Shown here one piece after another: positions 3,933 to 39,977 of a stretch of DNA of 64,000 bases. Within the stretch, counting starts at the first letter, position 1. Each line of letters starts with the position of its first letter. The position numbers and the translations under genes are program-made. The stretch lies in IMG/VR virus record IMGVR_UViG_3300037116_000299, positions 124,001-188,000 of that record. One strand, given 5' to 3'. The notes under the pieces were generated by a model. It saw only the letters and a program-made list of their open reading frames with translations. It did not search any database and was not told where the DNA came from.

Positions 3933-3962
3933 CTTTGGTAGTCGGGCGCCCTCCCTGACACT
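3933..3962 (+). promoter_or_regulatory. Class A putative phage promoter (CTTTGGTAG ... GACACT), probably leaderless
   Basis: Motif at 3933, NANNNT hexamer at +24, SD-less ATG at +36 (3969). Confidence 0.7.
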
Positions 3963-3968
3963 CGAGTT

Positions 3969-4298
3969 ATGAGCAAGGCAATCAAGCACGATCCCATCAG
4001 CACCAGCACGGCGAAGTTCAAACTGCGGGACACCTACGCACCGGGCAAGTTCGGCGTGTACCACGCCGATGGCGTCATCGTCAGCAGTCCGGTCATGCAG
4101 ATCGACGGCAAGTACGTGGCGATCTCCGATGAAATCTTCGTTGAAACCCATCGTCTGCTCTTCGACATCACCTCCCTGGGTACAGACGGACTGATGATCC
4201 AGGTCTACGAGAAGACGATGCCGGCAACCCTGTGGCAGCGCCTTCGGGCAGGCTGGCTTCGTCTCTTTGAACCGAGTGCTTGCCTGACGGGGTGCTGA
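3969..4298 (+). CDS. Hypothetical protein (109 aa)
   Basis: First gene of the rightward block; stop overlaps the next start (TGATG). Confidence 0.75.
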   Translation: MSKAIKHDPISTSTAKFKLRDTYAPGKFGVYHADGVIVSSPVMQIDGKYVAISDEIFVETHRLLFDITSLGTDGLMIQVYEKTMPATLWQRLRAGWLRLFEPSACLTGC

Positions 4299-4456
4299 TG
4301 ACCTTCTCTGATCTCATCCGCAGTCCGAAGTTCCTGCCCACCGTCATGGTGGCGCTGTCGGTGGCAGCATCCTGCCGGTACGCCCTCCAGGCGGACTGGC
4401 GCCACGCCATCTACTGGATGGCCTCTGCAGTTTTGGTTTCAGCAGTCACGTACTAG
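4298..4456 (+). CDS. Small membrane protein (52 aa), not in ORF track
   Basis: TGATG-coupled ORF MTFSDLIRSPKFLPTVMVALSVAASCRYALQADWRHAIYWMASAVLVSAVTY with two hydrophobic stretches. Confidence 0.65.
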   Translation: MTFSDLIRSPKFLPTVMVALSVAASCRYALQADWRHAIYWMASAVLVSAVTY

Positions 4457-4472
4457 AAGGAGTTCCCTAACC

Positions 4473-4838
4473 GTGGACTATTTGAAGATCGCCGAGGATG
4501 CCATGCGTGTCTTCGACAACCACTACGATTACGAGATCGATCTGCTCAATCGGAACAAGGTCATGCCCGTCCTGATTGCAAAATCGGGGAAAGACAAAAA
4601 CGCTGCATTCGACGAGGATGACCTGGCTCACATGTTCTTTTACCTGGAGACATCCAACTCGATCCCCAAGGATGCTGTTCTGGCCATGCCTCACGGATGC
4701 CCCTTTCAGACGGAGCGCGCGAAGTGTGTCTATGACTGGGGCCTCAACACCAGCCACCACAGTGGCCACGTCGTTCTCTATGACGCCGCTCAGGTTGATG
4801 CGTTCCGCTCGGCCGCGGCATTCAACATCAAGTGGTAA
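4473..4838 (+). CDS. Hypothetical protein (121 aa)
   Basis: GTG start with AAGGAG RBS; globular-looking sequence. Confidence 0.75.
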   Translation: MDYLKIAEDAMRVFDNHYDYEIDLLNRNKVMPVLIAKSGKDKNAAFDEDDLAHMFFYLETSNSIPKDAVLAMPHGCPFQTERAKCVYDWGLNTSHHSGHVVLYDAAQVDAFRSAAAFNIKW

Positions 4839-4901
4839 AACTGCGCCACCTAACCAGTTTCTGATTTCCAAATCAGAAACATCACAAATACCAGGAGACT
4901 T

Positions 4902-5510: not shown

Positions 5511-5520
5511 CCTGTTGGGG

Positions 5521-5550
5521 CTTTGGTAGTCCCCTGCCCTCTTCCATACT
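5521..5550 (+). promoter_or_regulatory. Class A putative phage promoter (CTTTGGTAG ... CATACT)
   Basis: Motif about 10 nt after the terminator; hexamer at +24. Confidence 0.7.
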
Positions 5551-5588
5551 CAGCACATCAGCCCAAACCGGGCGAGGAGATGAGAGCA

Positions 5589-6058: not shown

Positions 6059-6070
6059 AAGGACAGCACC

Positions 6071-6466: not shown

Positions 6467-6793
6467 ATGAAGATTCGCCCTCTCAGTCAGTACACCATCA
6501 TCAAACTCGATCCCTCGGAGAAGCAGATCGGCTCCATCCTCACGCCGGGTGGCACGTTCGAGCAGTTCAACGTGCCCAAGCGCACCGGAACCGTCATGGC
6601 CGTCGGCCGCGGTCTGGTGACCGCCGGCGGGCAGGTTCTCCCACCCCAGGTTGTCCCTGGCGATCGCGTCTACGTCCTTGAAGCCAAGGTCAAGATCGAG
6701 GTTGAGTACGACGGGGTCATGTGCCTCGCTCTTTCCGACGAGTCTCACATCGTCGGCGTCATCGTTGAAGACAACGATGGGAAGGAGGGGTAA
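6467..6793 (+). CDS. groES: GroES/Cpn10-like co-chaperonin (108 aa)
   Basis: MKIRPL..., mobile loop SEKQIGSIL, TGTVMAVGRG, VVPGDRV, IEVEYDG, DESHIVGVI match the Cpn10 pattern. Confidence 0.9.
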   Translation: MKIRPLSQYTIIKLDPSEKQIGSILTPGGTFEQFNVPKRTGTVMAVGRGLVTAGGQVLPPQVVPGDRVYVLEAKVKIEVEYDGVMCLALSDESHIVGVIVEDNDGKEG

Positions 6794-7080: not shown

Positions 7081-7592
7081 TGCGCCCGCCTCTCTCCGAG
7101 CCACCCAACCGGAACCAGCAGCTGGTCAACACGCTCAGCGCGCTCTGTGAGCGGCGCGGGTGGACGAGTACGCTTGACCAGGCTCGTTATCTGTTCGGCC
7201 CGCACCACTGTGAGATGTTCATGGAGTGTGGCCGGTGGGTAAAGCGCTGCCAATGCGGCGCGGAGGTCGACCCCAGTCAGGGTGGCCACCTCCTTCACCT
7301 GATCCAGATCCTGACTGTGGAGATGACCAATGAAGTTGTATCAGATTCAGTACACGGTGACCTTCGGCAAGGGCCCGAGCGCCCTCTGCTTCCCGGACAC
7401 AATGGTAGTTCCAGCGAACACGGAAGCGGAAGCGAAATCATCCTTTATCGGGACGGTGGAGAGGGTTGGCACGCTGCTGATGAAGTTCAACGACACCCGG
7501 CTGATGGCCCCGATCCGCGACCTCGGCGGTTCGCTCGCTATCATCGGATGCTCGAAGCTCTGAAGCGAACCTTCTCTAAGTGGTTCGCCTGA
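7080..7592 (+). CDS. Hypothetical Cys/His-containing protein (170 aa); C-terminal half overlaps another ORF
   Basis: TAATG-coupled start; HHCEMFMECGRWVKRCQCG; true length uncertain. Confidence 0.5.
   Translation: MRPPLSEPPNRNQQLVNTLSALCERRGWTSTLDQARYLFGPHHCEMFMECGRWVKRCQCGAEVDPSQGGHLLHLIQILTVEMTNEVVSDSVHGDLRQGPERPLLPGHNGSSSEHGSGSEIILYRDGGEGWHAADEVQRHPADGPDPRPRRFARYHRMLEALKRTFSKWFA
7330..7563 (+). CDS. Hypothetical protein (77 aa), nested in another frame of 7080-7592
   Basis: GGAG RBS; phage-like VVPANTEAEAK motif. Confidence 0.6.
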   Translation: MKLYQIQYTVTFGKGPSALCFPDTMVVPANTEAEAKSSFIGTVERVGTLLMKFNDTRLMAPIRDLGGSLAIIGCSKL

Positions 7593-7651: not shown

Positions 7652-7686
7652 GGGGTACGGCCCTAAGAAGCCGTGCCCCTCTTTTT
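7652..7686 (+). terminator. Intrinsic terminator
   Basis: GGGGTACGGC / GCCGTGCCCC stem followed by TCTTTTT. Confidence 0.8.
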
Positions 7687-7695: not shown

Positions 7696-7725
7696 CTTTG
7701 GTAGTCCGGCCGCGGCGCCCATCCT
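7696..7725 (+). promoter_or_regulatory. Class A putative phage promoter (CTTTGGTAG ... CATCCT), probably leaderless
   Basis: About 10 nt after the terminator; hexamer at +24; SD-less ATG at +36 (7732). Confidence 0.7.
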
Positions 7726-7731
7726 GGGTGC

Positions 7732-7938
7732 ATGGACGCCAAGAAAGAAGTCATGCGTCTCCTCAAGGAATCCGGAGTCGAGGAGCGCCATAACAAACAC
7801 CAGGCCTACCGGTTGAACGGTCATCTGATCGTGATCACCGGCACCAAGACTGACGACCGCGGCTGGATGAACAAGCTGTCGGAGATCCGCCGCGCCATCA
7901 AGACGCCGGCTGTAGAAGCTTTTCGGAAGGCCGCATGA
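7732..7938 (+). CDS. HicA-like small basic protein (68 aa)
   Basis: ERHNKHQAYRLNGHLIVITGTKTDDRGWMNKLSEIRR resembles the HicA-like (dsRBD-fold) pattern; no adjacent antitoxin seen. Confidence 0.45.
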   Translation: MDAKKEVMRLLKESGVEERHNKHQAYRLNGHLIVITGTKTDDRGWMNKLSEIRRAIKTPAVEAFRKAA

Positions 7939-8051
7939 TGCTCAATCGAATTCTCTGCTTCTTCGGACTGCATCGCTGGGTCCCGGCCGGTCCTTACATC
8001 GAGACTTGCCGCTGCTGTGGCGCGGTGCAAAACGTCTGGGTCCTCCTGTGA
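7935..8051 (+). CDS. Small Zn-finger-like phage protein (38 aa), not in ORF track
   Basis: ATGA overlap; LCFFGLHRW...TCRCCG (C-x4-H...C-x2-C). Confidence 0.6.
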   Translation: MMLNRILCFFGLHRWVPAGPYIETCRCCGAVQNVWVLL

Positions 8052-8941
8052 AGGAATGGACCCACGCCGATCTGGTAGCCCGGGCCGCCCGCTGGCTGTG
8101 GGGTACCTACGGCTGCAAGGCCGTGCTCACGGAGATGACCACTCACTCTGGCGAGATCCCTGACGTCATCGGCTGGAAGTTCAATGGACGCTCCGTCCTG
8201 GTCGAGTGCAAGACCAGCCGCGCCGACTTCAAAGCCGACGCCGACAAGCCCTTCCGCCAGAACCTGAACATCGCACTCGGCGCCGAACGCTACTACTTCG
8301 TGCCGGCGGGGCTGATCAAGCCGGAGGAGCTGCCGGCGGACTGGGGCCTGGCGGAACTGAAGGGCAACGGGGTCCACATCACCGTCCACGCCCGGCCGCG
8401 CAAGGACCTTCGTTCTGATGTAGCCCGCAACTACGAGATGCGCATGCTGGTCGCTGCCCTGGGCCGCACTGCCGCGCGTCTCCAGCCCATCCAGCTCAAC
8501 GACTGGCTGCGCTGGGAGAACCGGGAGCAGTCGCTCAACCAGATGCACGGCTGGGTCACCAAGGAAGATCACGAGGCCCACCTCTCCGCCCTGGCTGGCT
8601 GGGAGCAGGTTACCGATCCCAAGGATCTCCCGATCGACGACGTCACAGGTGAGGCCTGGTGTCCCAAGCATGAGCAGGCCTTCGCCGACTGTTGCTGCAT
8701 CGGCCCAGGCGAGCAGCATGTCCAGTACGAGGTGAAGAACGGCGTGCTGATGGCTTTTCCCATGGCGATGCACTGCTGCAAGTTCGAGCCCATCGAGTTG
8801 CGGGTAGCCCCGAGTCTCCGCATCGATGCCTGCGTTCTCCCGACGGACCAGGAGCGCTGGAGAGGCCGCAAGGACACGGAGTCCTTCATTCCAGGTCCCT
8901 CTTTGGTAGGCCTGTCCCTACAGGGGATTATTGCGGAGTGA
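8048..8941 (+). CDS. MmcB-like PD-(D/E)xK nuclease-domain protein with Cys-rich C-terminal extension (about 297 aa)
   Basis: EIPDVIGW...VLVECKTSRADFKAD.. and RYYFVP..LI...ELP..WGL pattern; GTG start overlapping the upstream stop. Confidence 0.7.
   Translation: MKEWTHADLVARAARWLWGTYGCKAVLTEMTTHSGEIPDVIGWKFNGRSVLVECKTSRADFKADADKPFRQNLNIALGAERYYFVPAGLIKPEELPADWGLAELKGNGVHITVHARPRKDLRSDVARNYEMRMLVAALGRTAARLQPIQLNDWLRWENREQSLNQMHGWVTKEDHEAHLSALAGWEQVTDPKDLPIDDVTGEAWCPKHEQAFADCCCIGPGEQHVQYEVKNGVLMAFPMAMHCCKFEPIELRVAPSLRIDACVLPTDQERWRGRKDTESFIPGPSLVGLSLQGIIAE
8901..8931 (+). promoter_or_regulatory. Class A putative phage promoter (CTTTGGTAG ... GATTAT)
   Basis: Motif in the last codons of the upstream gene; hexamer at +25; GGAGGG RBS and ATG 8969 downstream. 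Confidence 0.6.
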
Positions 8942-9965: not shown

Positions 9966-10151
9966 TTGGCGGAGGGAAGGGGGCCGCGCAACGGGGTTAG
10001 GAGGTTCGAGTGCCTACTGACTGTCAGTGGGTTCTCAATGATTGACCCGAGTACGTGGAACCTCTTAGATTCATGCCTATTCTGACTTAGTTGTGCCGTG
10101 AGTCTTTGACGGGTGTCCGGTAGGGTGTCATGCTCTTTCTACCTTCTTACA

Positions 10152-10255
10152 TTGAGTAGTGCTTAAAGACTTTAAGTAAGTCTTAACTATTGAGTACCTC
10201 TTAATCAGTCAGTACATCTCTACGTGATGTACTGCTTTTATTAAGTACCTCTAAA
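10152..10255. repeat. Four 15-bp imperfect palindromes TTRAG-TANNN-CTWAA in an AT-rich non-coding island
   Basis: Copies at 10152, 10172, 10190 and 10241; 10141-10260 is 35% GC by hand count. Confidence 0.75.
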
Positions 10256-10278
10256 GAGCGGGGTCCTCCCGCTCGATC

Positions 10279-10308
10279 CTTTGGTAGATCCAGACCATCC
10301 CGCATGCT
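10279..10308 (+). promoter_or_regulatory. Class A putative phage promoter (CTTTGGTAG ... CATGCT)
   Basis: Hexamer at +24; GAGGAG RBS and TTG 10349 downstream. Confidence 0.7.
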
Positions 10309-10348
10309 CAGTCATGTGGCCGGTCACCGGCTCCAGAGGAGAACTATC

Positions 10349-11207: not shown

Positions 11208-11672
11208 GTGTCCCAAGATACGAACCTCGGCTATCGCTCCAACTTCCCACTCACCAAGATCCTCGATCGCCTCTATCTCGGCGGCTTTCAGGACGCTCTT
11301 AACCTGCGCGGCCAGAACCCGCTCGGCATCACCCACATCTGCAACTGCACCAGCGAGAAGCTGGATCTGCCTCGTGCCAAGTTCAACATCATCCAGATGG
11401 ACCAGCTGGACGGTCACGAGTGGCACACCCAGAAGCTCTACGGCGCGGTCGACTGGATCCACCAGGCCCTGCGGGGCGGCGGTAAGGTCCTGGTCCACTG
11501 TCATGCGGGTGCGAGCCGCTCCCCTACCCTGGTCGCCTGCTACCTCTACACCTGTGGCTTCGGCTTCTACGAGTCCCTCGATGAGCTGCGCAAACAACGG
11601 CCCATCATCAACCCGGCGCCGGCAATTGTGATCAGCGCCAAGCGGGCCTTTGGTATCACCCCTGTCGCATAG
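11208..11672 (+). CDS. Dual-specificity protein phosphatase (154 aa)
   Basis: LTKILDRLYLGG, GITHICNC, GGKVLVHCHAGASRS (HCxxGxxRS), RKQRPIINP. Confidence 0.9.
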   Translation: MSQDTNLGYRSNFPLTKILDRLYLGGFQDALNLRGQNPLGITHICNCTSEKLDLPRAKFNIIQMDQLDGHEWHTQKLYGAVDWIHQALRGGGKVLVHCHAGASRSPTLVACYLYTCGFGFYESLDELRKQRPIINPAPAIVISAKRAFGITPVA

Positions 11673-11678
11673 CACTCT
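11648..11678 (+). promoter_or_regulatory. Class A putative phage promoter variant (CTTTGGTAT ... CACTCT)
   Basis: In the last codons of the phosphatase gene; hexamer at +25; GGAGG RBS starts at +37. Confidence 0.45.
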
Positions 11679-11694
11679 GGCTCTGGAGGCACGA

Positions 11695-12301: not shown

Positions 12302-12883
12302 ATGAGCGCCACCAAGATTGTGCCACTGGTCAAGAAGATGGACCGCTGGGAGAGCCACTTCATGCAGACGGCCATGCTGGCCGCGACTATGTCGGACGAC
12401 CGTTCCACCAAGGTGGGCTGCGTCATCGTGAAGGAAAACGCCATCCTGGCAAGCGGCTGCAACACCTTTCCCCGCGGCTGCTACGTGAACGGTGAGGACC
12501 TGGAACCTCATCTGCAGATGAGGGAGTACATGGTCTCGGGAATCATCAATCCGGAGTCTCGTGCCAGGATACTGGCCCCTATCGAGGCCCGCCACGACAA
12601 GCCCGCCAAGTACCTCTGGACCGAGCACGCCGAGCGCAACGCCATCTACGGTGTTGCCCGCCGCGGTGGACCGGCCTTGCAGGGCTCTGCCATCTATGTG
12701 CCCTGGTTCCCCTGCGCTGACTGTGCCCGGGCCATCATCCAGTCCGGCATCTCCCAGGTAGTTGCCTACATGCCCGGCTTCGATCACCCCAAGTACGGCC
12801 CGGATTTCAAGGTAGCCGTCCAGATGTTCCGGGAGAGCGGGGTTGATGTTCGCTATGTGGAACGTCTGGAAGCGGCCAAGTAA
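12302..12883 (+). CDS. dCMP deaminase-family protein (193 aa)
   Basis: STKVGCVIV, SGCN.FPRG, HAERNAI, PCADCARAIIQSGI. Confidence 0.92.
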   Translation: MSATKIVPLVKKMDRWESHFMQTAMLAATMSDDRSTKVGCVIVKENAILASGCNTFPRGCYVNGEDLEPHLQMREYMVSGIINPESRARILAPIEARHDKPAKYLWTEHAERNAIYGVARRGGPALQGSAIYVPWFPCADCARAIIQSGISQVVAYMPGFDHPKYGPDFKVAVQMFRESGVDVRYVERLEAAK

Positions 12884-13155: not shown

Positions 13156-13165
13156 CCTATACTAG
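13156..13165 (+). promoter_or_regulatory. Class B putative late promoter CCTATACTAG
   Basis: Intergenic copy of a motif seen five times at operon starts. Confidence 0.65.
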
Positions 13166-15588: not shown

Positions 15589-16023
15589 ATGCAGGCCATG
15601 AATATCTTCGTGGACGCAACCCAACAGCGCACCTTCAAAAGGCGCGCTGTTGCTGCGTTCCATAAGGACAAAGAGTATATGGAGGCTATCTTCGTCCGCC
15701 GGGGCGTTGGTGAGTTCCACGTCGTCAAGTTCATCAAGCTCAAGCTGCTCAAGCAGGGTCCCGAGATCGTCGACTCCGACGACGTCGAGTACCAGGCGCT
15801 GAAGAACGAGGCCAAGAACCTGGGGCTCGAGTTTGGCACCGTCCACACCCATCTCTACAACGACTCGGCTCCCTCGGAATGGGACCACAAAGAGAGCGTT
15901 GGCGAAGCCCTGGTTGGAGTCTGCTCCGTCTGGACCGACGAGAAGACGCAGAAGACCCACAGCCGTATCGACTTCTGGCAGCCTCAACTGCCCTGCAAGC
16001 TGAATGTTGTTCCCTCGAAATAG
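15589..16023 (+). CDS. JAB/MPN+ (JAMM) metalloprotease (144 aa)
   Basis: KEYMEAIF glutamate plus exact H-x-H-x7-S-x2-D motif (HTHLYNDSAPSEWD). Confidence 0.85.
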   Translation: MQAMNIFVDATQQRTFKRRAVAAFHKDKEYMEAIFVRRGVGEFHVVKFIKLKLLKQGPEIVDSDDVEYQALKNEAKNLGLEFGTVHTHLYNDSAPSEWDHKESVGEALVGVCSVWTDEKTQKTHSRIDFWQPQLPCKLNVVPSK

Positions 16024-16190
16024 GTGACCATGACCACATCCCCTCTGCGGACCTCTACCCAGGTCCGCCCCTCCCCTCTTGTCCGCGTCCCGACCAAGGT
16101 CATGAAGACCGGCGTCAGCAACTTTACCCCCGGGACGGCGACCTTCAGTCCCCGCGCCAGTGGCTCTCGCAAGCTCCGAGGGGTCTGATC

Positions 16191-16200
16191 CCTATACTAG
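16191..16200 (+). promoter_or_regulatory. Class B putative late promoter CCTATACTAG
   Basis: Directly before the first gene of the structural/packaging operon (AGGAG RBS, ATG 16222). Confidence 0.7.
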
Positions 16201-16221
16201 ATAGCTTTTAGGAGATCAATA

Positions 16222-16737
16222 ATGGTATCGATTCCAGCTAACAGAGCACTCAATATCCTCGACAGTGGGATGACGAAAGCCGCCTCCATGTGGAATTCGG
16301 CAGGCGCATCAAGGGCTGCAGGCATCGCCCGACAAGTTTCCAGTGGCATGCACCTGAAGAGTTCCGGGTTCGCTCTTGCAGCGGGCGCGGGCGCCGCGGC
16401 AGGTGGCGCGGCCGGTTACGCAGCCAGCGATGGCGATATGAGCGGAGCAGCCAAGGGCGCGGCCCTGGGTGTACTGGGCGTCGCCGGTTTCCGCGGCATC
16501 CAGTCTGCCCGTTCCAGCTATAACGGCGGCCTTCTTCGCGATGGCGTAAGTTCAGCCAAGAGCTGGGCTTCCGGAAAGTGGCAGAACGGCATGCTGCAGG
16601 CTCGTCTGGGCGCAATGGAATTGGAGCAGCGCAGCACCAGCGCCGCTGTGACGGCGGGGTCCGTAGGCAAACGGATGAGCAGCCGCGGTGCGGCAGAAGC
16701 CGATCGCGCGTTCTGGCGTGCCAATCCGAACGGGTAA
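16222..16737 (+). CDS. Gly/Ala-rich hydrophobic protein, possible virion-internal/ejection protein (171 aa)
   Basis: Glycine-zipper-like GFALAAGAGAAAGGAAGYA segment; late-operon position. Confidence 0.6.
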   Translation: MVSIPANRALNILDSGMTKAASMWNSAGASRAAGIARQVSSGMHLKSSGFALAAGAGAAAGGAAGYAASDGDMSGAAKGAALGVLGVAGFRGIQSARSSYNGGLLRDGVSSAKSWASGKWQNGMLQARLGAMELEQRSTSAAVTAGSVGKRMSSRGAAEADRAFWRANPNG

Positions 16738-16740
16738 ACC

Positions 16741-17466
16741 ATGACCGATCCCGTCTTTGCCGGCACCAAGGCAGCGCAGTTCCTGAAATCCAAGGGCATC
16801 TTCGTCGCCGCCGCGGCCGCCGGCGCCGGCGGCATCGCCATTGGAGCGGCACGCGGCAGCAGTCAGCATCAGGACGCTTCACCCACCACTCGCGCAGGCC
16901 TGGCGGCTCATCATGCGGTTGGCGCTGGCCTGATTCTGGCCGGAGTCGGAGCTGGAGTCTACGCCGCCAAGGGAACGCTTTGGAAGGGCGGCTACAAGGC
17001 CGCGACCGGTGCTGTCGAAGCGGGAGGCAAGTCCTTTACCGCAGCGACCCGGGAAACGGGGATAGCCAATACCTTTCTGAAACACCCCATCGTTCCTACC
17101 GCGATCGGTATGGGACTCGGCGGGCTCGTCGGGGCCCAGATGGACAAAGACAATCCCGCCGCGGGCGCCGCGATGGGGATGGTCGCAGGCGGAGCTGCAG
17201 GTCTGGCACTGCGTAGCGGCCGGAACATGGCCAAGAGCTGGAGCAAGACACCTCGGGTTGGCAAAGCAGCCTTGATTGCCGGCGCAGCGATCGGCGTTAC
17301 TGCAGCAGCGCACGCTTTCACCCACGAACAGTCTTATGCCGCTGATGACACCGCCGTAAGCGATGGCCGCGGCAGCTACGAGGCAACCGCGGGACCTCGA
17401 GAGCGGATGCAGTCGATGAATGCGACAGGATATCTGGTCTTCGGTCTCAACGCGCGTAGGCACTAA
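16741..17466 (+). CDS. Gly/Ala-rich multi-hydrophobic-helix protein, possible ejection protein (241 aa)
   Basis: Several glycine-zipper-like segments. Confidence 0.6.
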   Translation: MTDPVFAGTKAAQFLKSKGIFVAAAAAGAGGIAIGAARGSSQHQDASPTTRAGLAAHHAVGAGLILAGVGAGVYAAKGTLWKGGYKAATGAVEAGGKSFTAATRETGIANTFLKHPIVPTAIGMGLGGLVGAQMDKDNPAAGAAMGMVAGGAAGLALRSGRNMAKSWSKTPRVGKAALIAGAAIGVTAAAHAFTHEQSYAADDTAVSDGRGSYEATAGPRERMQSMNATGYLVFGLNARRH

Positions 17467-22672: not shown

Positions 22673-24915
22673 TGCCCAGCAAGACCGCTAACCAGATGAA
22701 AGCAGACCGTCTTCAGATCCAGGAAACGTATCGGCTCACCCGCCTCATGGCATTCACGGACGGCACGCTGAAGAGCGCGTCGAAGCCGATCGCGATGCGG
22801 AGGACGGTTGCCGGCAAGCAGATGGAGCCCAACATCAAAGGGCTCGGCGATCGTACCGCTTCGTACACCGGCGGAACCTTCCAGCCGCGGGAGATCCCGA
22901 CCGGAGCACGCCACGTCACCGATGCCCAGATGCGCGCCTGGAAGACGACCGTCGACAGCGGGATGAAGATCGCCGATGCCGGGAAGATCATCAACCCGGA
23001 CATCACCCGGATCAAGCAGGCCAAGGCGGCCGACTACATCGGCACCTATTACATGTGGAATGGGGTCCTGCAGCCGGAATACGACATGCGCGAACCGCAT
23101 GCCATCGTGGACACCGAAGTCTATGTAAAGCAGATGGTCCACCGGAAGCTGGCGCTCGCCGCCCGCGCCGGCTACGAGATCATGAGCGACCGGGATGAGG
23201 ACGCTGAGTACATCCAGCACCGCATCGACGTCATGGAGTTTGTCTCGGAGCGCAGTTTCCCCAGCCTGCTCAAGGGCATTCTGTACAACCTCTTCACCTG
23301 CTCCAACTGCTTTGTTCACAAGCTGCGCAAGGAAGATGCGTCCCCGGTTCCCCGCAAGAAGGGGATGCCGGCGCCGGTCGCCGCCTATTCGATCATCCCG
23401 GCCCACACCATCCAGCCCTACCTCGAGCATGGCCGGATCGTGAAGTGGCGTCGCTTCTTCGACTCCGCCGTTCCGTGGCAGGACATCCCGGTCGAAGACA
23501 TCATCCACTTCAAGTGGTCCTCCGATCTCAAGGCTGGCCACATCTATGCCACCCCGCGCACGATCGCCGTCCGCGACGACATCTTTGCGCTCCGCCGCTT
23601 GGAAGAGAACGTCGAACTGCTGTTCATCAACCACTTGTTCCCGTTGTTCCACGTTCAAGTGGGCACCGCGGAAGCGCCTTGCACCTACGGCGACAACGGC
23701 GAGTCTGAGATCGACCTGGTCCGCTGGCAGATCGAGAACATGCCGAAGGAAGGCGTCTATGTCTCGGACGAGCGCGTCAAGATCAGCGCCGTCGGCGCCG
23801 AAGGCAAGTCCCTCGACTTCTCCCCACTGGTAACGCACTACAAGAGCCGCGTCTATGTCGGGCTGGGCATGAGCGCCATCGACATGGGCGAAGGCGCGGA
23901 CGCAACGCGCGCCACCGCCGACAACATCTCGCAGAACCTCAAGGATTCGATCAAGGCCGATCTCGATGACCTGGCCGATCAGATCCGGATGTTCATGTTC
24001 CGCGACTGGTTCATGGAGGCGAACTACTCGACCTCCGTGCAGAAGGGCGTGGCCCGCACCTTCATCCGGTTCCACGAACTGGATCTCGACAACCGGATCA
24101 AGGAAGAGACCCACGTCCTGGCTCTCTTCAACTCCCACCTCATCACCGAGGATGAAGCCCGCAAGCGCCTGAAGTACAAGGCGATGACTCCGAAGGATCG
24201 GGGCAACACCCACTTCAGCCTGCATGTGGTGAAGCTTGAGAAGGAGATTACCAAGTTCAAGACTGCCTCGACCCTCGAAATCAACGCCGCCAATGTCGAC
24301 AACGAAAAGAAGATGGCAGGCACCCAGATCAAGCTGATGGAGGCGCAGGCCAAACTCTCCGAGACCAAGACCGGTCACGAGGAGCAGAGTCTCGCCGCCC
24401 AGGCCAAGCATCTGCCTGTCATCGCCAAGGCCAAGGTAGCGGTGGCGAATGCTACCGCGCGCAAGGGCGCCGCCGGCGCGCCGCGCCGCTCAACCGCCAA
24501 GAAGACGACGCAGACCGCGGCCGCCGTCTCGAATAAGATGCGCCCGACCAACCAGCACGGCAGCGGCCTGGGGCCGACCAAGGCTAAGTCCAGCCGTGAA
24601 TCCTTCATGGGCGAGTTGTACGAAGGCTTGCTGCTGGCGCGCGAGGACATGATCAGCGATGGACAGTCCGCGCCGAAACAGTGGCAGTCGGTCAGTTCGG
24701 AAGTGGTAGATCAGGTCCTGGACCGTATGGAGAAAGCTGAAATCACCGGTTCGGGTGGTGATTCCTATACTAGACAGGTGAGAGATGGACTTAGCCGATT
24801 GAAGGCCATGATCGCTGAGACCTCTGACCCTGAACTTCTCTCTGTCCTCCTTCGGGAAGGCATCGAGGAAGAGGTAGTAGACGATGTCGAACTTCACGAC
24901 GCACTTGCCAGTTAG
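22672..24915 (+). CDS. Portal protein with long Lys/Ala-rich C-terminal extension (747 aa)
   Basis: Position between terL and protease; DIIHFKW, YATPRTIAVRDDIFALRR, LFPLFHVQVG, RVYVGLGMSAIDMG...RATAD portal-like motifs. Confidence 0.8.
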   Translation: MPSKTANQMKADRLQIQETYRLTRLMAFTDGTLKSASKPIAMRRTVAGKQMEPNIKGLGDRTASYTGGTFQPREIPTGARHVTDAQMRAWKTTVDSGMKIADAGKIINPDITRIKQAKAADYIGTYYMWNGVLQPEYDMREPHAIVDTEVYVKQMVHRKLALAARAGYEIMSDRDEDAEYIQHRIDVMEFVSERSFPSLLKGILYNLFTCSNCFVHKLRKEDASPVPRKKGMPAPVAAYSIIPAHTIQPYLEHGRIVKWRRFFDSAVPWQDIPVEDIIHFKWSSDLKAGHIYATPRTIAVRDDIFALRRLEENVELLFINHLFPLFHVQVGTAEAPCTYGDNGESEIDLVRWQIENMPKEGVYVSDERVKISAVGAEGKSLDFSPLVTHYKSRVYVGLGMSAIDMGEGADATRATADNISQNLKDSIKADLDDLADQIRMFMFRDWFMEANYSTSVQKGVARTFIRFHELDLDNRIKEETHVLALFNSHLITEDEARKRLKYKAMTPKDRGNTHFSLHVVKLEKEITKFKTASTLEINAANVDNEKKMAGTQIKLMEAQAKLSETKTGHEEQSLAAQAKHLPVIAKAKVAVANATARKGAAGAPRRSTAKKTTQTAAAVSNKMRPTNQHGSGLGPTKAKSSRESFMGELYEGLLLAREDMISDGQSAPKQWQSVSSEVVDQVLDRMEKAEITGSGGDSYTRQVRDGLSRLKAMIAETSDPELLSVLLREGIEEEVVDDVELHDALAS
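24764..24773 (+). promoter_or_regulatory. Class B putative late promoter CCTATACTAG
   Basis: Inside the portal 3' end, upstream of the head-assembly genes; context TTCCTATACTAGACAG matches the 42258 copy. Confidence 0.55.
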
Positions 24916-30217: not shown

Positions 30218-30247
30218 CTTTGGTAGTCCGCTCCGCCCTTCCACAAT
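30218..30247 (+). promoter_or_regulatory. Class A putative phage promoter (CTTTGGTAG ... CACAAT)
   Basis: Hexamer at +24; GGAGG RBS at +37; ATG 30268. Confidence 0.7.
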
Positions 30248-30267
30248 CAGGGGTGGAGGCATACTTC

Positions 30268-32043: not shown

Positions 32044-32289
32044 ATGTCCTTTCTTCCCAGCATCAAGATCACGTTTCCCGACCTGACCAGTAAGACCGCG
32101 ACCATCGTGATCCTGCTCGGCCTCGACCTGTTGTTCTTTCACTCGGCCATCTCCGGAGCACACGACACCATCACCACCAACCGGCTCTGGGAGTTGTTCG
32201 TCGGATCCAACGCAGGTCTGTTGCTGGCGCTCAATGCAGGCAGCAGCCACATGCCTCCTCCGCCCGCGGTCCCCACAGGAATTCTGTAA
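32044..32289 (+). CDS. Putative holin (81 aa)
   Basis: Two hydrophobic helices; directly after the endolysin. Confidence 0.55.
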   Translation: MSFLPSIKITFPDLTSKTATIVILLGLDLLFFHSAISGAHDTITTNRLWELFVGSNAGLLLALNAGSSHMPPPPAVPTGIL

Positions 32290-33065
32290 TGTCGGTTCTT
32301 CAAACAGCTTGCTTCCTCCGCAACCGGCGCCGCCGGGCGCGCGTCGCTTCAGTATTCACCTTCAGAAACGCTGTCCTCACTGCGGCCGCTTTCGCGCTGG
32401 TGTGTCTTGGACTTGCATTCCTATCGGTGCGCAAGGCCGCGACTGGGATGGTCGTAACGGAGCAAGCGCTGAACACGTTTGCCGCGACGGCGACGCGGGA
32501 AGTCACCAACAACGGCGATGAAGCCCACCGGGTTCTGCTCGAGGCTGGTCTGACAGCAACTGAGGCGCGCAAGGCCGCGGTGACCCAGCGCAAGTATTGG
32601 GAAACCGAAGTCCCCGTCCTCACCGCCAAGTCGGAGTTGACCCTCGATCGGACCAATGAACTTCTGGCGTCGCTCAAGAAGACGTCGGACGGCTTCAACG
32701 GTGATGGCACGGACATCACCAAGGAAGTGCTCAACGTCCTCGGCGATCTGCGGCCCGCGCTGCAGAAGAGCACCGAGACTCTCCAGGCGACCGCCGATAC
32801 GGCCCGCGCCGCCACCAAGGTGATCGGGGATCCTGCGATTCCCTCAGCTTTGAAGCACGTCGACACTGCGACGGGCCACATTGCTGAAGCGTCCGATCAC
32901 TTTGCCAAGGCTACTGACCACGTTGAGAAAACTATGGTCGATATCCAGGGCGGCGTGCACACCATCGTCCACCCCACCAAGGTCCAGCAGGTTAAGAACT
33001 GGATCACATTCAGCCTCGACGTGGCTCAGAAGTTCACCGAGACCCACTTCTACTGGCCCTTCTAG
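32289..33065 (+). CDS. Membrane-anchored coiled-coil protein, possible i-spanin (258 aa)
   Basis: Basic N-terminus, TM helix AVLTAAAFALVCLGLAFLSV, helical Ala/Thr-rich body; lysis-cassette position. Confidence 0.45.
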   Translation: MSVLQTACFLRNRRRRARVASVFTFRNAVLTAAAFALVCLGLAFLSVRKAATGMVVTEQALNTFAATATREVTNNGDEAHRVLLEAGLTATEARKAAVTQRKYWETEVPVLTAKSELTLDRTNELLASLKKTSDGFNGDGTDITKEVLNVLGDLRPALQKSTETLQATADTARAATKVIGDPAIPSALKHVDTATGHIAEASDHFAKATDHVEKTMVDIQGGVHTIVHPTKVQQVKNWITFSLDVAQKFTETHFYWPF

Positions 33066-33095
33066 CTTTGGTACTTCGTTTCTCCCATCCACACT
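33066..33095 (+). promoter_or_regulatory. Class A putative phage promoter (CTTTGGTAC ... CACACT)
   Basis: Hexamer at +24; AAGGAG RBS begins at +36. Confidence 0.65.
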
Positions 33096-33114
33096 CACAT
33101 CAAGGAGCACACTC

Positions 33115-37110: not shown

Positions 37111-38870
37111 TGCCCCTGATGGCGCCCACGCCCATTGCGATGGCGAATCGTGGTAACACGGTCACCAACAGCAACACCGTTGCGGCTACGACACTCACCA
37201 TGTCTATCGCCAACAACAGTGTGGGTGTGAACGGGGGCAACTCCGTGGGCGGAAATGTATTGATGGTAGCGGCTATCGCTATCTACACGGCCAGTGTGAC
37301 GGTCTCCTCCATCACCCCCGGAGCGAACCTCTTCACCGGATGGACATTTCAAGGAGCAAGCACCGAACCCGGCTCAGGCGTCCGCATTGAACTGTGGACG
37401 ACGCCTTGTGTCCTCGGGGCTGGAACAGCCAACTCGACCATCAACTTCAGTTCAGCCGCTCTGGCCTCTGTGTCCGTGACCAGCTACACGGAACCTTACG
37501 ACTACCCCTCGTCGCCTCTGGTGAACAGCGGTTTGTACAACAACACCAACGGCATCACCACCGGTGTTCACGTTGAGACCATCTCTCCCGCAGCCTTCAC
37601 AGCGGGAAACCTGATTATCATGAGTATGCAAGCGACTCCGACCCCCACCAGCGTCACGGACAGTGTAGGTACCACATACACTTTGGTCAACACCGGTTCC
37701 TACAATGCCTATGGTGCTAACCTCTACGTCGCCGTGTTCGCCGGTATCGCCGCAGGTTCCTCCGCGTCTCCCACGGTGACGATGCACTTCGGGGCCAGCA
37801 GTGGTGTCTATCGCTACTACGTGAGCCAGTGGGCCGGGGTCACCGCAACGGTGGACACAACGAACGCTGTAGGAGTCCCGTCTCTTGGCGGGGCTGCGAT
37901 GAACACTATCAACGTCACCACGACCAATGCCAATGACCTCATTCACACCGTGCTTGCCATGTATGGTGGGAACCCGACCGTGTTGAGTCAATATCCGGGC
38001 AACGGCGTCATTGGTAGTTTTGAAGGCGCCAGAATTGTAAACAGTACGGGAACCTACCCGACCTACTGGACAAACAACAACTCAAGTATGGCGGTCACCA
38101 CCGCGTTCAAGGTATCTCCGACGTACACTCCGACCGCCGCGCCAACACCGCGTGTCGTAACGGCTCACAGTGCTGCAAGCACTGGTTTTTATGCTGAACT
38201 GGACAACACCCCCCAGTACGGGGGAAACATGATGGTCACCGCGTATGCGGTGGCTACCAACTCAGGAGATACATTCGCGGGTGCGGTTGGTACGCTTCGA
38301 ACTTCGGTGACACCTACGGTGACATCCGCTGCTGCTGTCCTCATGGAGAATGGGCCAACTAGCACCATCGCCAGTATGCGTACTCAGTTGAGGATGTCGT
38401 CCCAACGGGCATGGGCTGCTATCAGCTTTGAACTGGTGGCCGCTAACGGCACCTACACGCTGAATGCCAACCCGCTCGTTCAGTCCAACCACATAGGTCA
38501 ATCTGAAACGGCCAAGTACCAAGTGAAGTCCACCGACATAATCGAGAAGTACATGGTTCCGTCTCAGAATGGAAGTAGCTCCGGACTCTATCTGTTTGCT
38601 CAGGCTCTCGCCAGCGCTACCCTTGGCATTGCGTACTCAGAAACGATCTTTGCTACCGGAGGTTCCAGCCCCTATGCACTCACGGTTCTGTCCGGGACTC
38701 TGCCTCCTGGTCTGTCCTTGAACTCAGGCACTGGTGTGATTTCCGGTACACCTACAACGGCAGGTACGTACGGTTTCACGCTCAAGGCAATTGACTCGCT
38801 GCGCAACACTACGACTTGCACGTTCCAGATCCTGACGATTGCATCGACCAACAGCGGATTCGTGAACTAA
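37110..38870 (+). CDS. Thr/Ser-rich beta protein with C-terminal putative Ig (He_PIG-like) domain (586 aa)
   Basis: ATLGIAYSETIFATGGSSPYALTVLSGTLPPGLSLNSGTGVISGTPTTAGTYGFTLKAIDS. Confidence 0.75.
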   Translation: MPLMAPTPIAMANRGNTVTNSNTVAATTLTMSIANNSVGVNGGNSVGGNVLMVAAIAIYTASVTVSSITPGANLFTGWTFQGASTEPGSGVRIELWTTPCVLGAGTANSTINFSSAALASVSVTSYTEPYDYPSSPLVNSGLYNNTNGITTGVHVETISPAAFTAGNLIIMSMQATPTPTSVTDSVGTTYTLVNTGSYNAYGANLYVAVFAGIAAGSSASPTVTMHFGASSGVYRYYVSQWAGVTATVDTTNAVGVPSLGGAAMNTINVTTTNANDLIHTVLAMYGGNPTVLSQYPGNGVIGSFEGARIVNSTGTYPTYWTNNNSSMAVTTAFKVSPTYTPTAAPTPRVVTAHSAASTGFYAELDNTPQYGGNMMVTAYAVATNSGDTFAGAVGTLRTSVTPTVTSAAAVLMENGPTSTIASMRTQLRMSSQRAWAAISFELVAANGTYTLNANPLVQSNHIGQSETAKYQVKSTDIIEKYMVPSQNGSSSGLYLFAQALASATLGIAYSETIFATGGSSPYALTVLSGTLPPGLSLNSGTGVISGTPTTAGTYGFTLKAIDSLRNTTTCTFQILTIASTNSGFVN

Positions 38871-39940
38871 GCCACTTGGATCTTGGTCTTGAGGACCGCG
38901 ATCCAAGGCTGCATCCATCCCGTATCGCGCGAGTTCCGTTCGATCGCGGCCAGCGTCCTGTCCGCGAGTCCGATCCTTCCGGTTTGAATCGCAGCAAAGG
39001 CAAACTCGTACGGCATTAGGTGCTGGTAGATGGTGGCATCGATGAACAACCGATCTTCCTTCGGATAGGGGAAGTCGTGGCCCCAGACCGAAGCATAGAA
39101 GAATGCCATCCGCGGCTCATCGATCGCCCGGTAATGCTGGACGATTTCATAGATCGGCTCAATGCGCGTCGGCCGATATTGGTAAGCCTTGAGGAATAGG
39201 GGCAGCACGGTCGCCTCCCAATCCTCTCCCAGGCGCATGGCCATCCGGCCCTTCTGATACATGGCGTACCAGCGTTCCTCGTCGAAGCCTTCAAGCAGCA
39301 CGCGTCGCCCATACCAGTATTCGGCGGGCCCATAGTGGCCGAAGTCCTTGTAGGACTGGGCCAGATAGAAGAGGCTCCGCGGATTGGTCGGATCTTCGAT
39401 CACAGCCTTGGTCAACAGGCAGATGTCGCGTTCGAACTTGTCCGTACGCATTGCTCCATCCGCCAGGTGAGTCAGGCTGATGTCGTGGATCTGCTCAAAG
39501 CGCAGCGCCGTCGGCGACGTGATGTATTCGTGGGTGACCCCGACATAGTTCCACTCGTGGCGCGACGACACCAGCATGGTCTGGGTGTAGTCGAGCGACC
39601 CTTCGTAGCGCAACTCATACGCATCCGCGGTCAGCTTTTCCTTGAATGGAGCCCGAACATTCAACACCATGTCCGCATCCATGATCAGCATGTAATCAGT
39701 CTTCGCCCGAGCGAGCCGTACGAGTTGCGTGCGATTGGCCCCGAAATTCACCCATGGGACTTCAATCAGATCCCCCGGCAGGCTCCCCAGTACGTCGAGC
39801 ACGATCGCCTGGGTGCCATCTGTCGACCCTGTGTCGCAAACGATCCAGGAATCGATCCATGGCTTCGCGGACTCTAGGGCGCGCCGAACGACTGCGCTCT
39901 CATTCTTCACCATCATGGCCAGGCAAACAGTTGGTTTCAT
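38867..39940 (-). CDS. Family-2 glycosyltransferase with C-terminal TPR-like region (357 aa)
   Basis: VCLAMMVKNE, IVCDTGSTDGT, WVNFGANR, LIMDAD (DxD), GVTHE; RSLFYLAQSYKD TPR-like helices. Confidence 0.9.
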   Translation of the reverse strand: MKPTVCLAMMVKNESAVVRRALESAKPWIDSWIVCDTGSTDGTQAIVLDVLGSLPGDLIEVPWVNFGANRTQLVRLARAKTDYMLIMDADMVLNVRAPFKEKLTADAYELRYEGSLDYTQTMLVSSRHEWNYVGVTHEYITSPTALRFEQIHDISLTHLADGAMRTDKFERDICLLTKAVIEDPTNPRSLFYLAQSYKDFGHYGPAEYWYGRRVLLEGFDEERWYAMYQKGRMAMRLGEDWEATVLPLFLKAYQYRPTRIEPIYEIVQHYRAIDEPRMAFFYASVWGHDFPYPKEDRLFIDATIYQHLMPYEFAFAAIQTGRIGLADRTLAAIERNSRDTGWMQPWIAVLKTKIQVA

Positions 39941-39946
39941 ATCGCC

Positions 39947-39977
39947 ATCATTCCATTGGCGAAAGTAGGTACCAAAG
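39947..39977 (-). promoter_or_regulatory. Class A putative phage promoter on the minus strand (CTTTGGTAC ... AATGAT), probably leaderless
   Basis: Hexamer at +25 and SD-less ATG at +37, both shifted by one base relative to the +24/+36 sites. Confidence 0.65.

What the first reader, a model, noticed from the sequence alone, without database searches (positions are those of the whole stretch)
3933..39977. Class A bipartite promoter CTTTGGTA(G/C/T)-N15/16-NANNNT with exact sigma70 -10 geometry
Seen: nine copies (3933, 5521, 7696, 8901, 10279, 11648, 30218, 33066, and 39977 on the minus strand), all at gene boundaries in the sense orientation. All have an N-A-N-N-N-T hexamer at +24 (GACACT, CATACT, CATCCT, CATGCT, CACAAT, CACACT) or +25 (GATTAT, CACTCT, AATGAT). 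With a start at +36/+37 the hexamer is -12..-7 with A-11 and T-7, the two bases flipped by sigma region 2 (established). The upstream box at about -36..-28 is not TTGACA. Inference: it is read by a phage sigma factor, by host sigma appropriated by a phage activator (analogous to the T4 MotA box), or by a sigma-like domain of RNAP-1. No sigma gene is visible in this window.
Basis: partly seen in the sequence, partly recalled or inferred. Interest (0 to 1): 0.82.

Follow-up and report, generated by a model that had tools for sequence, protein, structure and literature searches.

The report
Sigma-type promoter family of acidobacterial jumbo phage
The repeated CTTTGGTA boxes are real transcription start signals of an uncultured giant phage of soil Acidobacteria, built like ordinary bacterial -35/-10 promoters and probably read by a sigma factor that the phage itself encodes outside this window; this is a new example of a known kind of phage gene control.

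Summary
The window has nine exact CTTTGGTA boxes (0.48 expected). Every box has an nAnnnT hexamer 16 or 17 nt downstream, sits at a gene boundary and points in the sense direction.

I rebuilt the whole 214-kb phage genome. It holds 24 boxes. Seventeen lie at gene boundaries with the hexamer. Five of the six boxes deep inside genes lack it.

The last six bases of the box, TTGGTA, occupy the -35 position (TTGnnA) with a 16/17-nt spacer, so the architecture is sigma70-type. At three window genes the ATG begins exactly 7 nt after the hexamer's T. The same holds for the lysozyme gene outside the window and for an orthologue in a Terracidiphilus MAG.

Relatives keep the box, the spacing and A-11/T-7 while flanks and spacers diverge. 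In some relatives the box sits 16 nt upstream of the phage's second conserved element (CTATACTAGA, a -10-only class).

The window has no sigma gene, but the genome does: a roughly 376-aa divergent sigma70-family protein whose gene lies directly behind a class A promoter.

Best reading: host core RNAP plus this phage sigma. Host primary sigma is the main rival. The phage's QDE-1-like RNAP is a minor rival. This is a new member of a known kind.

The parts
3933..3969 (+). Class A promoter: box 3933-3940, N16, hexamer GACACT 3957-3962, predicted start 3969, which is the A of the ATG of the 109-aa gene (leaderless).
   Evidence: The JGI gene call starts at this ATG.
5521..5557 (+). Class A promoter: box, N16, CATACT 5545-5550. 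Leadered gene, with ATG at 5580 or 5589 behind GAGGAG. A hairpin plus T-run lies just upstream.
7696..7732 (+). Class A promoter: box, N16, CATCCT 7720-7725, predicted start 7732, which is the A of the ATG of the 68-aa gene (leaderless). Terminator-like hairpin at 7652-7679 just upstream.
8901..8938 (+). Class A promoter: box, N17, GATTAT 8926-8931. The box overlaps the last 41 nt of ORF 8006-8941.
10279..10315 (+). Class A promoter: box, N16, CATGCT 10303-10308. The gene probably starts at TTG 10349 behind GAGGAG.
11648..11685 (+). Class A promoter: box, N17, CACTCT 11673-11678. The box overlaps the end of ORF 11208-11672. The downstream gene starts at ATG 11695.
30218..30254 (+). Class A promoter after the major head gene: box, N16, CACAAT 30242-30247. 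The gene starts at ATG 30268. Box, spacing and hexamer type are kept at the syntenic site in relatives with 75-84% identical head protein.
33066..33102 (+). Class A promoter directly after the stop codon of gene 32289-33065: box, N16, CACACT 33090-33095. The gene starts at ATG 33115 behind AAGGAG. Syntenic copies exist in relatives.
39940..39977 (-). Class A promoter on the minus strand: box 39977-39970, N17, AATGAT 39952-39947, predicted start 39940, which is the A of the ATG of the glycosyltransferase gene (leaderless). The orthologue in a Terracidiphilus MAG keeps the box, N17, an nAnnnT hexamer, 6 nt and the ATG, with a different spacer and hexamer sequence.
55474..55510 (+). Candidate weaker class A site: CTTTGATA (one mismatch), N16, GATGCT. 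It lies in the intergenic gap 156 nt upstream of the giant ORF 55630-60579.
   Evidence: This rests on inference only.

Best explanation
Class A elements are sigma70-type promoters of a temperate-looking jumbo myovirus of Acidobacteriaceae. TTGGTA, inside the invariant CTTTGGTA, acts as the -35 element. It is followed by a 16 or 17 nt spacer and then a -10 hexamer [C/G/A]-A-[T/C]-N-[C/A]-T with invariant A-11 and T-7. Transcription starts 7 nt after that T, usually at a purine. In at least four genes of this genome that base is the A of the ATG, giving leaderless mRNAs.

My preferred sigma is the phage's own divergent sigma, about 376 aa, at genome positions 15784-16911 on the minus strand, about 107 kb upstream of the window. 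Its region-4 helix-turn-helix would bind the box. Its gene lies immediately downstream of a class A promoter, so it may feed back on itself.

The second conserved element, CTATACTAGA (class B), is a -10-only promoter of the same system.

Shown here: the motif, its geometry, its positional and strand bias, its conservation, the coincidence with ATG codons, and the existence of the sigma-like gene. Inferred: that transcription starts there, and which sigma reads it.

My split of probability: sigma-type promoter about 0.85. Within that, phage sigma about 0.45-0.5 and host primary sigma alone about 0.3. Phage QDE-1-like RNAP about 0.1.
For: Motif statistics and gene-boundary, sense-strand bias in the window come. 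The same holds for the whole genome.

Geometry: the spacer is only ever 16 or 17 nt. A and T are invariant at hexamer positions 2 and 6 in 26 of 27 distinct instances across loci with at least 50% GC. Position +1 is a purine in 13 of 17 sites.

Start site: the ATG lies exactly 6 nt after the hexamer at 3969, 7732 and 39940 in the window, p = 3e-4. The same is true at the lysozyme gene outside the window, where the JGI gene call starts at that ATG. It is also true at the glycosyltransferase orthologue L066:15134, which has a different spacer and hexamer. This matches the known signature of bacterial leaderless genes, a -10 hexamer beginning 12 nt before the start codon (PMC3160421).

Footprint: relatives keep the box, N16/17 and nAnnnT at syntenic sites while flanks differ.

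Hybrid promoters: CTTTGGTA-N16-TATACTAGAG occurs in L074, L076 and L077. This places the box at -35 relative to the class B -10. The two classes also share A at position 2, T at position 6 and a preference for C at position 5 of the hexamer.

Phage sigma: Pfam Sigma70_r4 scores 26.6 bits, above the curated cutoff of 24.1, E = 4.4e-6, at the C-terminus. A profile of 21 homologues has sigma F and FliA as its best PDB sequence hits, with collinear region 2.2 and region 4.2 segments. Sixteen of 21 family members hit the PHROG family 'RNA polymerase sigma factor'. The nearest Atlas clusters are viral sigma-family proteins. Fold hits are dominated by sigma A, sigma 28, sigma B and sigma 32, though weakly.

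Gene arrangement: a class A promoter precedes the sigma gene and a class B element follows it, both here and in relatives whose sigma is 61-62% identical.

Against a primary-sigma reader: T at -12 occurs in only 2 of 17 sites, and the 8-mer is invariant. That fits a narrow-specificity alternative sigma better than a housekeeping sigma.
Against: There are no RNA data, so the start sites are inferred.

The sigma-like protein has no Pfam region-2 hit. Its region-2 similarity and its fold matches are weak (E 0.005-0.1; model pLDDT 78, pTM 0.58).

A sigma gene lying behind the promoter class it reads needs a separate starter. The same arrangement would equally fit a cascade in which class A, read by host sigma, makes the phage sigma, which then reads class B.

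The promoter preferences of the host's primary sigma are unknown.

The phage also encodes a QDE-1-like RNAP next to the first class A site, and perhaps a virion RNAP. The promoters of these enzymes are unidentified.

Loci with more distant sigma homologues (46% identity or less) mostly lack the box. That may simply reflect overall divergence.
Confidence: 0.5

Rival explanations
1. Host primary sigma (sigma A) holoenzyme reads class A directly as -35/-10 promoters. These would be early or middle promoters. The phage sigma, made from one of them, then reads the -10-only class B late promoters, as in a classic phage sigma cascade.
For: TTGGTA matches TTGACA at 4 of 6 positions, including TTG, with a canonical 16/17-nt spacer and canonical A-11/T-7. 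The promoter in front of the sigma gene has the most sigma A-like -10, TATTCT. Six class A sites cluster in front of small genes of unknown function, which look like early genes. Class B sites lie before structural genes.
Against: T at -12 is present in only 2 of 17 sites. The 8-mer is invariant in all copies and across relatives, which is unusually strict for housekeeping promoters. The phage sigma keeps a region-4 HTH, yet class B has no -35 element for it to bind. A standard sigma70 consensus scan does not pick up any class A site. Class A also drives the lysozyme gene and genes inside the structural module.
Confidence: 0.3
2. The phage's QDE-1-like single-subunit two-barrel RNAP reads class A. 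This enzyme is 1032 aa, on the minus strand, at window 1-2793 and running off the left edge. The box would be its recognition element and the resemblance to sigma geometry would be coincidental.
For: The enzyme is real. The family has an invariant RxP...GGDMDD motif that aligns with GGDYDGD of QDE-1. The model has pLDDT 89.6 and matches QDE-1 at E about 1e-13 and the P74-26/P23-45 non-virion RNAPs at 1e-5 to 3e-4. Its operon diverges from the first class A promoter. Phage RNAPs typically have strongly conserved promoters (PMC10770324).
Against: I know of no two-barrel single-subunit RNAP that uses a bipartite promoter with a variable 16/17-nt spacer and an A-11/T-7 -10 element. The model shows no sigma-like or HTH domain. 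The hybrid with the TATACT -10 and the separate sigma gene are explained more simply by a sigma holoenzyme.
Confidence: 0.1
3. Sigma appropriation or activation. A phage DNA-binding activator binds the box and recruits host holoenzyme to the weak -10, by analogy with T4 MotA/AsiA. One candidate is the phage's NarL/GerE-type response regulator.
For: The -10 hexamers are weak and the upstream box is invariant. The genome encodes a response regulator with a GerE/Sigma70_r4-type HTH, a Ser/Thr kinase and XRE-type HTH proteins.
Against: The box sits at the -35 position and contains TTG. It is not centred near -30, 11-13 bp from the -10, as a MotA box is. It is asymmetric and single-copy, unlike typical dimeric response-regulator sites. 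No MotA or AsiA domains appear in any Pfam listing seen.
Confidence: 0.07

Closest known systems
Phage-encoded sigma factors with their own promoter consensus (Bacillus phage SPO1 gp28 and gp33/34; phiEco32 gp36; T4 gp55). Recalled from the literature, not re-read here.
   Same: A phage-specific, highly conserved promoter consensus repeated at gene boundaries. Host core RNAP is redirected by a phage sigma70-family protein. There are two promoter classes in one genome.
   Different: The consensus here (CTTTGGTA-N16/17-sAynCT) is new. The sigma is very divergent: only region 4 passes Pfam, and tblastn finds no match in any cultured phage. The sigma gene lies behind the class it is proposed to read. 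The assignment of sigma to class is not proven.
Thermus phage P23-45 transcription programme (PMC10770324)
   Same: The phage carries a QDE-1-like non-virion RNAP and a giant tail or ejection-type protein with an RNAP-like DxDxD motif. It also uses bacterial RNAP. It has -10-only promoters and leaderless mRNAs.
   Different: In P23-45 the phage-RNAP promoters are contiguous AT-rich or GC-rich motifs, and no phage sigma has been reported there. Here the over-represented motifs are sigma-type, and no separate phage-RNAP promoter motif was found by k-mer enrichment.
T4 middle promoters (MotA box plus sigma70 -10)
   Same: An invariant upstream box replaces a canonical TTGACA, and it is combined with an nAnnnT -10.
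   Different: The box position differs: it ends 16-17 bp from the -10 and spans -36 to -29, whereas a MotA box is centred at -30. The box contains TTG. The T at -12 is missing. No MotA or AsiA was found.
Leaderless-gene promoters of high-GC bacteria (TAnnnT beginning 12 nt before the start codon; PMC3160421)
   Same: The hexamer begins exactly 12 nt before the ATG in 4 of 17 sites of this genome and in one orthologue. Only positions 2 and 6 are informative.
   Different: Position 1 is C, G or A rather than T, and a strongly conserved -35-type box is present.

Membership tests
sigma70-type bipartite (-35/-10) promoter | -10 hexamer with A at position 2 and T at position 6 | tested here: met
   Met at 9 of 9 window sites, 17 of 18 gene-boundary sites genome-wide and 26 of 27 distinct instances across relatives. 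Background frequency is 0.073.
sigma70-type bipartite (-35/-10) promoter | -35 element of TTGnnn type 16-18 bp upstream of the -10 | tested here: met
   TTGGTA, the last six bases of the box, has a spacer of 16 nt (11 sites) or 17 nt (6 sites) and no other length. In relatives the box also lies 16 nt upstream of TATACT.
sigma70-type bipartite (-35/-10) promoter | Transcription starts about 7 nt downstream of the -10 T | tested here: inconclusive
   The evidence is indirect. The ATG lies exactly at that position in 3 window genes, the lysozyme gene and one orthologue (p = 3e-4). Position +1 is a purine in 13 of 17 sites. No RNA 5'-end data are available.
primary-sigma (sigma A/sigma70) promoter specifically | T at -12 (TAnnnT) | tested here: not met
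   T is at hexamer position 1 in only 2 of 17 sites in this genome and in 0 of 26 instances of the earlier locus set.
T4 MotA-box middle promoter | Activator box centred near -30, 11-13 bp upstream of the -10, with MotA/AsiA-type proteins | tested here: not met
   The box ends 16-17 bp from the -10. No MotA or AsiA family appears in any Pfam listing seen. The alignment scans show only the top 25 families, so this is not exhaustive.
sigma70-family sigma factor (the ~376-aa protein at genome 15784-16911, minus strand) | C-terminal region 4 helix-turn-helix | tested here: met
   Pfam Sigma70_r4 scores 26.6 bits against a cutoff of 24.1, E = 4.4e-6, at residues 407-453 of the long ORF. Sixteen of 21 homologues hit PHROG sigma-factor families.
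sigma70-family sigma factor (the ~376-aa protein at genome 15784-16911, minus strand) | Region 2 (core binding and -10 recognition) | tested here: inconclusive
   There is no Pfam r2 hit. The profile aligns a region 2.2-like segment (..YD..v.Cl.ra..kYDP) with sigma F and FliA, collinear with region 4. Fold hits to full-length sigma A, sigma 28, sigma B and sigma 32 have E of only 0.006-0.4.
sigma70-family sigma factor (the ~376-aa protein at genome 15784-16911, minus strand) | Binds core RNAP and directs initiation at class A | not testable with these tools
   This needs biochemistry.
QDE-1/YonO-like two-barrel single-subunit RNAP (the 1032-aa protein, window 1-2793, minus strand) | Double-psi beta-barrel core with a catalytic Asp triad | tested here: met
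   The family has invariant R485/P487 and G529, D531, D533, D534. The profile hits QDE-1 at E = 4e-4 across this region. The model has pLDDT 89.6 and Foldseek matches QDE-1 at E about 1e-13.

The most novel reading that the evidence does not exclude
Class A promoters are read not by a bacterial sigma holoenzyme but by the phage's QDE-1-like single-subunit RNAP, alone or using the phage sigma-like protein as its specificity factor. That would be the first two-barrel single-subunit RNAP known to use a bipartite -35/-10-type promoter with A-11/T-7 geometry.
Probability: 0.1. Interest if true: 0.85.

Novelty: new member of a known kind. Interest (0 to 1): 0.45.

Why it matters
In the literature searches I ran, nothing was found on transcription signals of phages that infect Acidobacteriota, a dominant but genetically intractable soil phylum. 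This finding gives a precise, testable promoter consensus, a candidate cognate phage sigma and a set of leaderless gene starts. These can be used to annotate this widespread peat and soil phage clade. The promoter and sigma may also serve as an orthogonal pair for acidobacterial genetics. The finding also shows a jumbo, integrase-carrying phage that combines a sigma-type regulon with a QDE-1-like RNAP and possibly a virion RNAP.

Tried and rejected
- Megablast of 25 kb of the window against cultured phages found no match. tblastn of the sigma against the same collection found no match. The head protein reaches only 27-31% identity, to 0305phi8-36, ME3 and MTATph1-type jumbo phages.
- A standard sigma70 consensus scan found nothing above chance and missed every class A site.
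- A literature search for the 8-mer returned only irrelevant hits.
- Rfam found no family in the window, so the motif is not part of a known RNA. There are no tRNAs.
- The search for homologous proteins on the 1032-aa RNAP found only the protein itself. The exhaustive HMMER search was needed.
- The exact-protein look-up of the 1649-aa ORF found nothing on record.
- I searched loci that carry distant sigma homologues for a co-varying alternative box. Orthologous repeats confounded the result and nothing usable came out.
- The Atlas search of the giant ORF's DTDGD region gave only weak leads, scores 0.69-0.78.
- I considered a repressor operator and rejected it, because the box is asymmetric, single-copy and strictly orientation-specific.
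- I considered a terminator-associated element and rejected it, because the hairpins precede the box and are not always present.
- I considered a coding artefact and rejected it, because the boxes deep inside genes are the ones that lack the hexamer.


Full report
**1. The observation**

The minus-strand copy spans 39977-39970. Dinucleotide shuffles expect 0.48 copies, and none of 100 shuffles reached nine.

Every copy is followed by an nAnnnT hexamer after 16 nt (six copies) or 17 nt (three copies). The background frequency of such a hexamer at either offset is 0.073, so nine of nine has p about 6e-11.

All nine copies lie within 105 nt upstream of a same-strand start codon. Only 5.6% of strand-positions lie within 110 nt upstream of one (p about 5e-12). 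The window is 94% coding.

**2. What the window is**

The window is bases 124001-188000 of IMG/VR contig IMGVR_UViG_3300037116_000299, which is 214,300 bp. The same sequence lies on a 254,873-bp JGI contig.

It encodes a terminase, a portal protein, a major head protein and a tail sheath, so it is a jumbo myovirus. The head protein is only 27-31% identical to those of cultured jumbo phages of the 0305phi8-36, ME3 and MTATph1 type.

Relatives of the head protein occur in MAGs of Acidobacteriaceae, Terracidiphilus and Candidatus Angelobacter. One sits near the end of a 3.26-Mb Acidobacteriaceae contig. The genome also carries an integrase. The host is therefore most likely Acidobacteriaceae, and the phage is probably temperate.

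**3. The whole genome**

I walked along the contig and joined the pieces in a scratch file. All overlaps were identical. One 4.3-kb gap was filled from a strain whose flanking anchors matched exactly and whose insert has the same length.

Genome-wide there are 24 exact boxes against about 3.4 expected from a third-order Markov model. CTTTGGTA and CTATACTAG are the two most over-represented words in the genome.

Eighteen boxes have the hexamer. Seventeen of these lie in intergenic gaps or the last 150 nt or so of the upstream gene, and all 17 point the way the local genes run, on either strand. Of the six boxes deep inside genes, five lack the hexamer (Fisher p = 8e-4).

The site consensus is (g)CTTTGGTA(g-t-y-c-c), a spacer of 16 or 17 nt in total, C-A-T/C-N-C-T, then G-G. 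The base 7 nt after the hexamer T is a purine in 13 of 17 sites.

**4. Geometry**

Its last six bases, TTGGTA, nevertheless lie exactly where a -35 hexamer lies, separated by 16/17 nt from the -10. They match TTGnnA, including the TTG triplet. The architecture is therefore fully sigma70-type and not merely sigma70-like at the -10.

**5. Where transcription starts**

- At 3933, 7696 and 39977(-) the ATG of the downstream gene begins exactly 6 nt after the hexamer. The A of the ATG is then the predicted +1 base.
- The chance of three or more such coincidences among nine sites is 3e-4.
- The same holds for a tenth copy outside the window, in front of the phage lysozyme gene, where the JGI gene call starts at that ATG.
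- It also holds for the glycosyltransferase orthologue in the Terracidiphilus MAG contig. There the spacer and hexamer sequences differ but box, N17, nAnnnT, 6 nt and ATG are all kept.
- A -10 hexamer beginning 12 nt before the start codon is the published signature of bacterial leaderless genes (PMC3160421).

**6. Conservation**

Relatives with 68-84% identical head protein keep CTTTGGTA, the N16/17 spacing and nAnnnT at syntenic sites. Upstream flanks and spacers differ. Twenty-six of 27 distinct instances in loci of at least 50% GC have the hexamer. In that set position 1 of the hexamer is never T.

**7. A second class, and a hybrid**

A second word, (t)tcCTATACTAGA, occurs five times in the window, at 13157, 16192, 24765, 39996 and 42259, all on the + strand. 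It occurs nine times in the genome.

It contains a canonical -10 hexamer, TATACT, and has no conserved -35. The window copies at 24765, 39996 and 42259 lie within or next to the structural-gene region.

In relatives L074, L076 and L077 a class A box lies exactly 16 nt upstream of this TATACT. So the box sits at -35 relative to a bona fide -10. The two classes also share a preference for A-C-T at hexamer positions 4 to 6. This points to one kind of holoenzyme reading both classes.

**8. Who reads it**

The genome does.

An ORF at genome 15784-17175 on the minus strand has a C-terminal Pfam Sigma70_r4 match above the curated cutoff. Homologues are about 375 aa and align from residue 88 of the ORF, so the true start is probably at 16911.

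Evidence that it is a sigma:
- A profile of the family finds sigma F and FliA as the best PDB sequences, with collinear region 2.2-like and region 4.2 segments.
- Sixteen of 21 members hit PHROG 'RNA polymerase sigma factor' families.
- The nearest Atlas clusters are viral sigma-family proteins.
- Fold hits are weak but dominated by full-length sigma A, sigma 28, sigma B and sigma 32.

The nearest upstream promoter of this gene is a class A site, CTTTGGTA-N16-TATTCT at genome 17221(-), directly after the stop codon of the preceding gene. A class B site follows the gene. Relatives whose sigma is 61-62% identical show the same arrangement. Loci with sigma homologues of 46% identity or less mostly lack the box. 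That last point is suggestive but confounded by overall divergence.

**9. Other polymerases**

The large minus-strand gene at the left edge of the window (window 1-2793; 1032 aa in full) is a QDE-1-like two-barrel single-subunit RNAP.
- The family has an invariant RxP...GGDMDD motif, and its profile hits QDE-1.
- The model has pLDDT 89.6. It matches QDE-1 and RDR2 at E of 1e-13 to 1e-8, and the P74-26 and P23-45-type non-virion RNAPs and phi14:2 gp66 at 1e-5 to 3e-4.

The 1649-aa ORF at 55630-60579 carries DTDGDRMSAH, close to the universal beta-prime motif NADFDGDQMAVH. Nothing else supports it yet.

**10. Verdict**

Class A sites are real sigma70-type promoters, several of them leaderless. 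The most likely reader is host core RNAP with the phage's own sigma, at about 0.45-0.5. Host sigma A alone is the main rival, at about 0.3. That rival fits a cascade in which class A makes the phage sigma, which then reads class B. The QDE-1-like RNAP is at about 0.1 and an activator model below that.

Two points argue against a housekeeping sigma: the near-absence of T at -12 (2 of 17 sites) and the invariance of the 8-mer. One point argues for the cascade: a sigma gene that sits behind its own promoter class needs a separate starter.

Phage-specific promoter families read by phage sigmas are well known, so this is a new member of a known kind. It is of moderate interest as the first transcription signal I could find described for a phage of Acidobacteriota.

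Noticed in passing
window 13157, 16192, 24765, 39996, 42259 (+); genome-wide 9 copies: A second promoter class, (t)tcCTATACTAGA(c/t)ag. It has a canonical -10 (TATACT) with conserved flanks and no -35. In the window the copies at 24765, 39996 and 42259 lie within or next to the structural-gene region. It is conserved in relatives L065 and L066. Together with class A it is the most over-represented word in the genome.
   Followed up: partly
L074:20371, L076:14977, L077:14977: Hybrid promoters in relatives: CTTTGGTA-N16-TATACTAGAG, i.e. a class A box at -35 of a class B -10. In L075 and L078 the 20 nt printed before the CTATACTAG begin TGGTGGAAGG instead of TGGTAGAAGG, which points to a substituted box at the corresponding position; the full box was not read.
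   Followed up: partly
window 1-2793 (-), continuing to about -305 (L062:10897-13995): A 1032-aa QDE-1/RdRP-like two-barrel single-subunit RNAP with an invariant GGDMDD catalytic motif. The model has pLDDT 89.6 and a Foldseek match to QDE-1 at E about 1e-13. It also matches the P74-26/P23-45 non-virion RNAPs. The family has about 93 representatives, many apparently from Acidobacteriota-associated sequences.
   Followed up: yes
window 55630-60579 (+) and 60583 to beyond 64000 (to about 66273): A giant ORF of 1649 aa carries DTDGDRMSAH, close to the RNAP beta-prime motif NADFDGDQMAVH. It is followed by a single in-frame stop and then a 1896-aa ORF in the same frame that carries an SLT transglycosylase. 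This could be a virion RNAP fused to an ejection or tape-measure-like protein, possibly by readthrough, as in P23-45 gp96. The two pieces were searched separately, and only weak leads beyond the motif were found.
   Followed up: partly
genome 15784-16911 (-), about 107 kb upstream of the window (L111:15784-16911:-): A divergent phage sigma70-family gene of about 376 aa. The ORF is callable as 463 aa, but the first 87 codons look non-coding. It is flanked by a class A promoter upstream and a class B element downstream, and the arrangement is conserved in relatives.
   Followed up: yes
window: 982(-), 13735, 20269, 38009, 43181(-), 47759, 55474, 56844, 58396(-): One-mismatch boxes carry the nAnnnT hexamer more often than chance: 9 of 24, p = 3e-5. 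Several of these lie inside genes and some are antisense (43181-, 58396-). They could be weak internal or antisense promoters.
   Followed up: no
window 7574-7590 (+); left of the window at about -21420, -11783, -7340, -3060 and -1621 on the minus strand: A recurrent word, (CT)AAGTrGTTyCACC, lies just after stop codons and before hairpins in several intergenic gaps. It could be a terminator-associated or processing motif, compare the conserved terminator motif of the P23-45 virion RNAP.
   Followed up: no
window about 10150-10270: An AT-richer stretch with repeated AGTACCTCT/AGTACATCT words and a hairpin lies just upstream of the class A promoter at 10279. A similar CAGTACCAC word lies in the divergent region 3690-3930. 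Function unknown.
   Followed up: no
L006/L035, L043-L045, L047, L051, L054-L058: Relatives with 61-82% identical head protein have only 38-41% GC, against 59% here. That is a large compositional shift within one capsid lineage and suggests hosts in very different taxa. In those loci the rare CTTTGGTA copies lack the hexamer.
   Followed up: no
L109:14360-15517 (-); L065 (contig CAWENG010000004.1, 3.26 Mb); JGI contig 254,873 bp versus UViG 214,300 bp: The phage carries a tyrosine integrase. A close relative lies near the end of a 3.26-Mb Acidobacteriaceae contig. IMG/VR trimmed about 40.5 kb from the JGI contig. Together these suggest an integrated (temperate) jumbo phage.
   Followed up: partly
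L081:16337-17050, L081:10001-11131, L081:11128-12915, L081:9718-10026: The phage encodes a NarL/GerE-type response regulator, a Ser/Thr protein kinase, a large TPR protein and an XRE-type HTH protein. This is a signalling and regulatory module that could modulate transcription.
   Followed up: no
window 6467-6793, 12302-12883, 54401-55471: Auxiliary genes: Cpn10 (GroES-like), dCMP deaminase, and a ClpB/AAA_2-type ATPase placed between the two giant structural ORFs.
   Followed up: no
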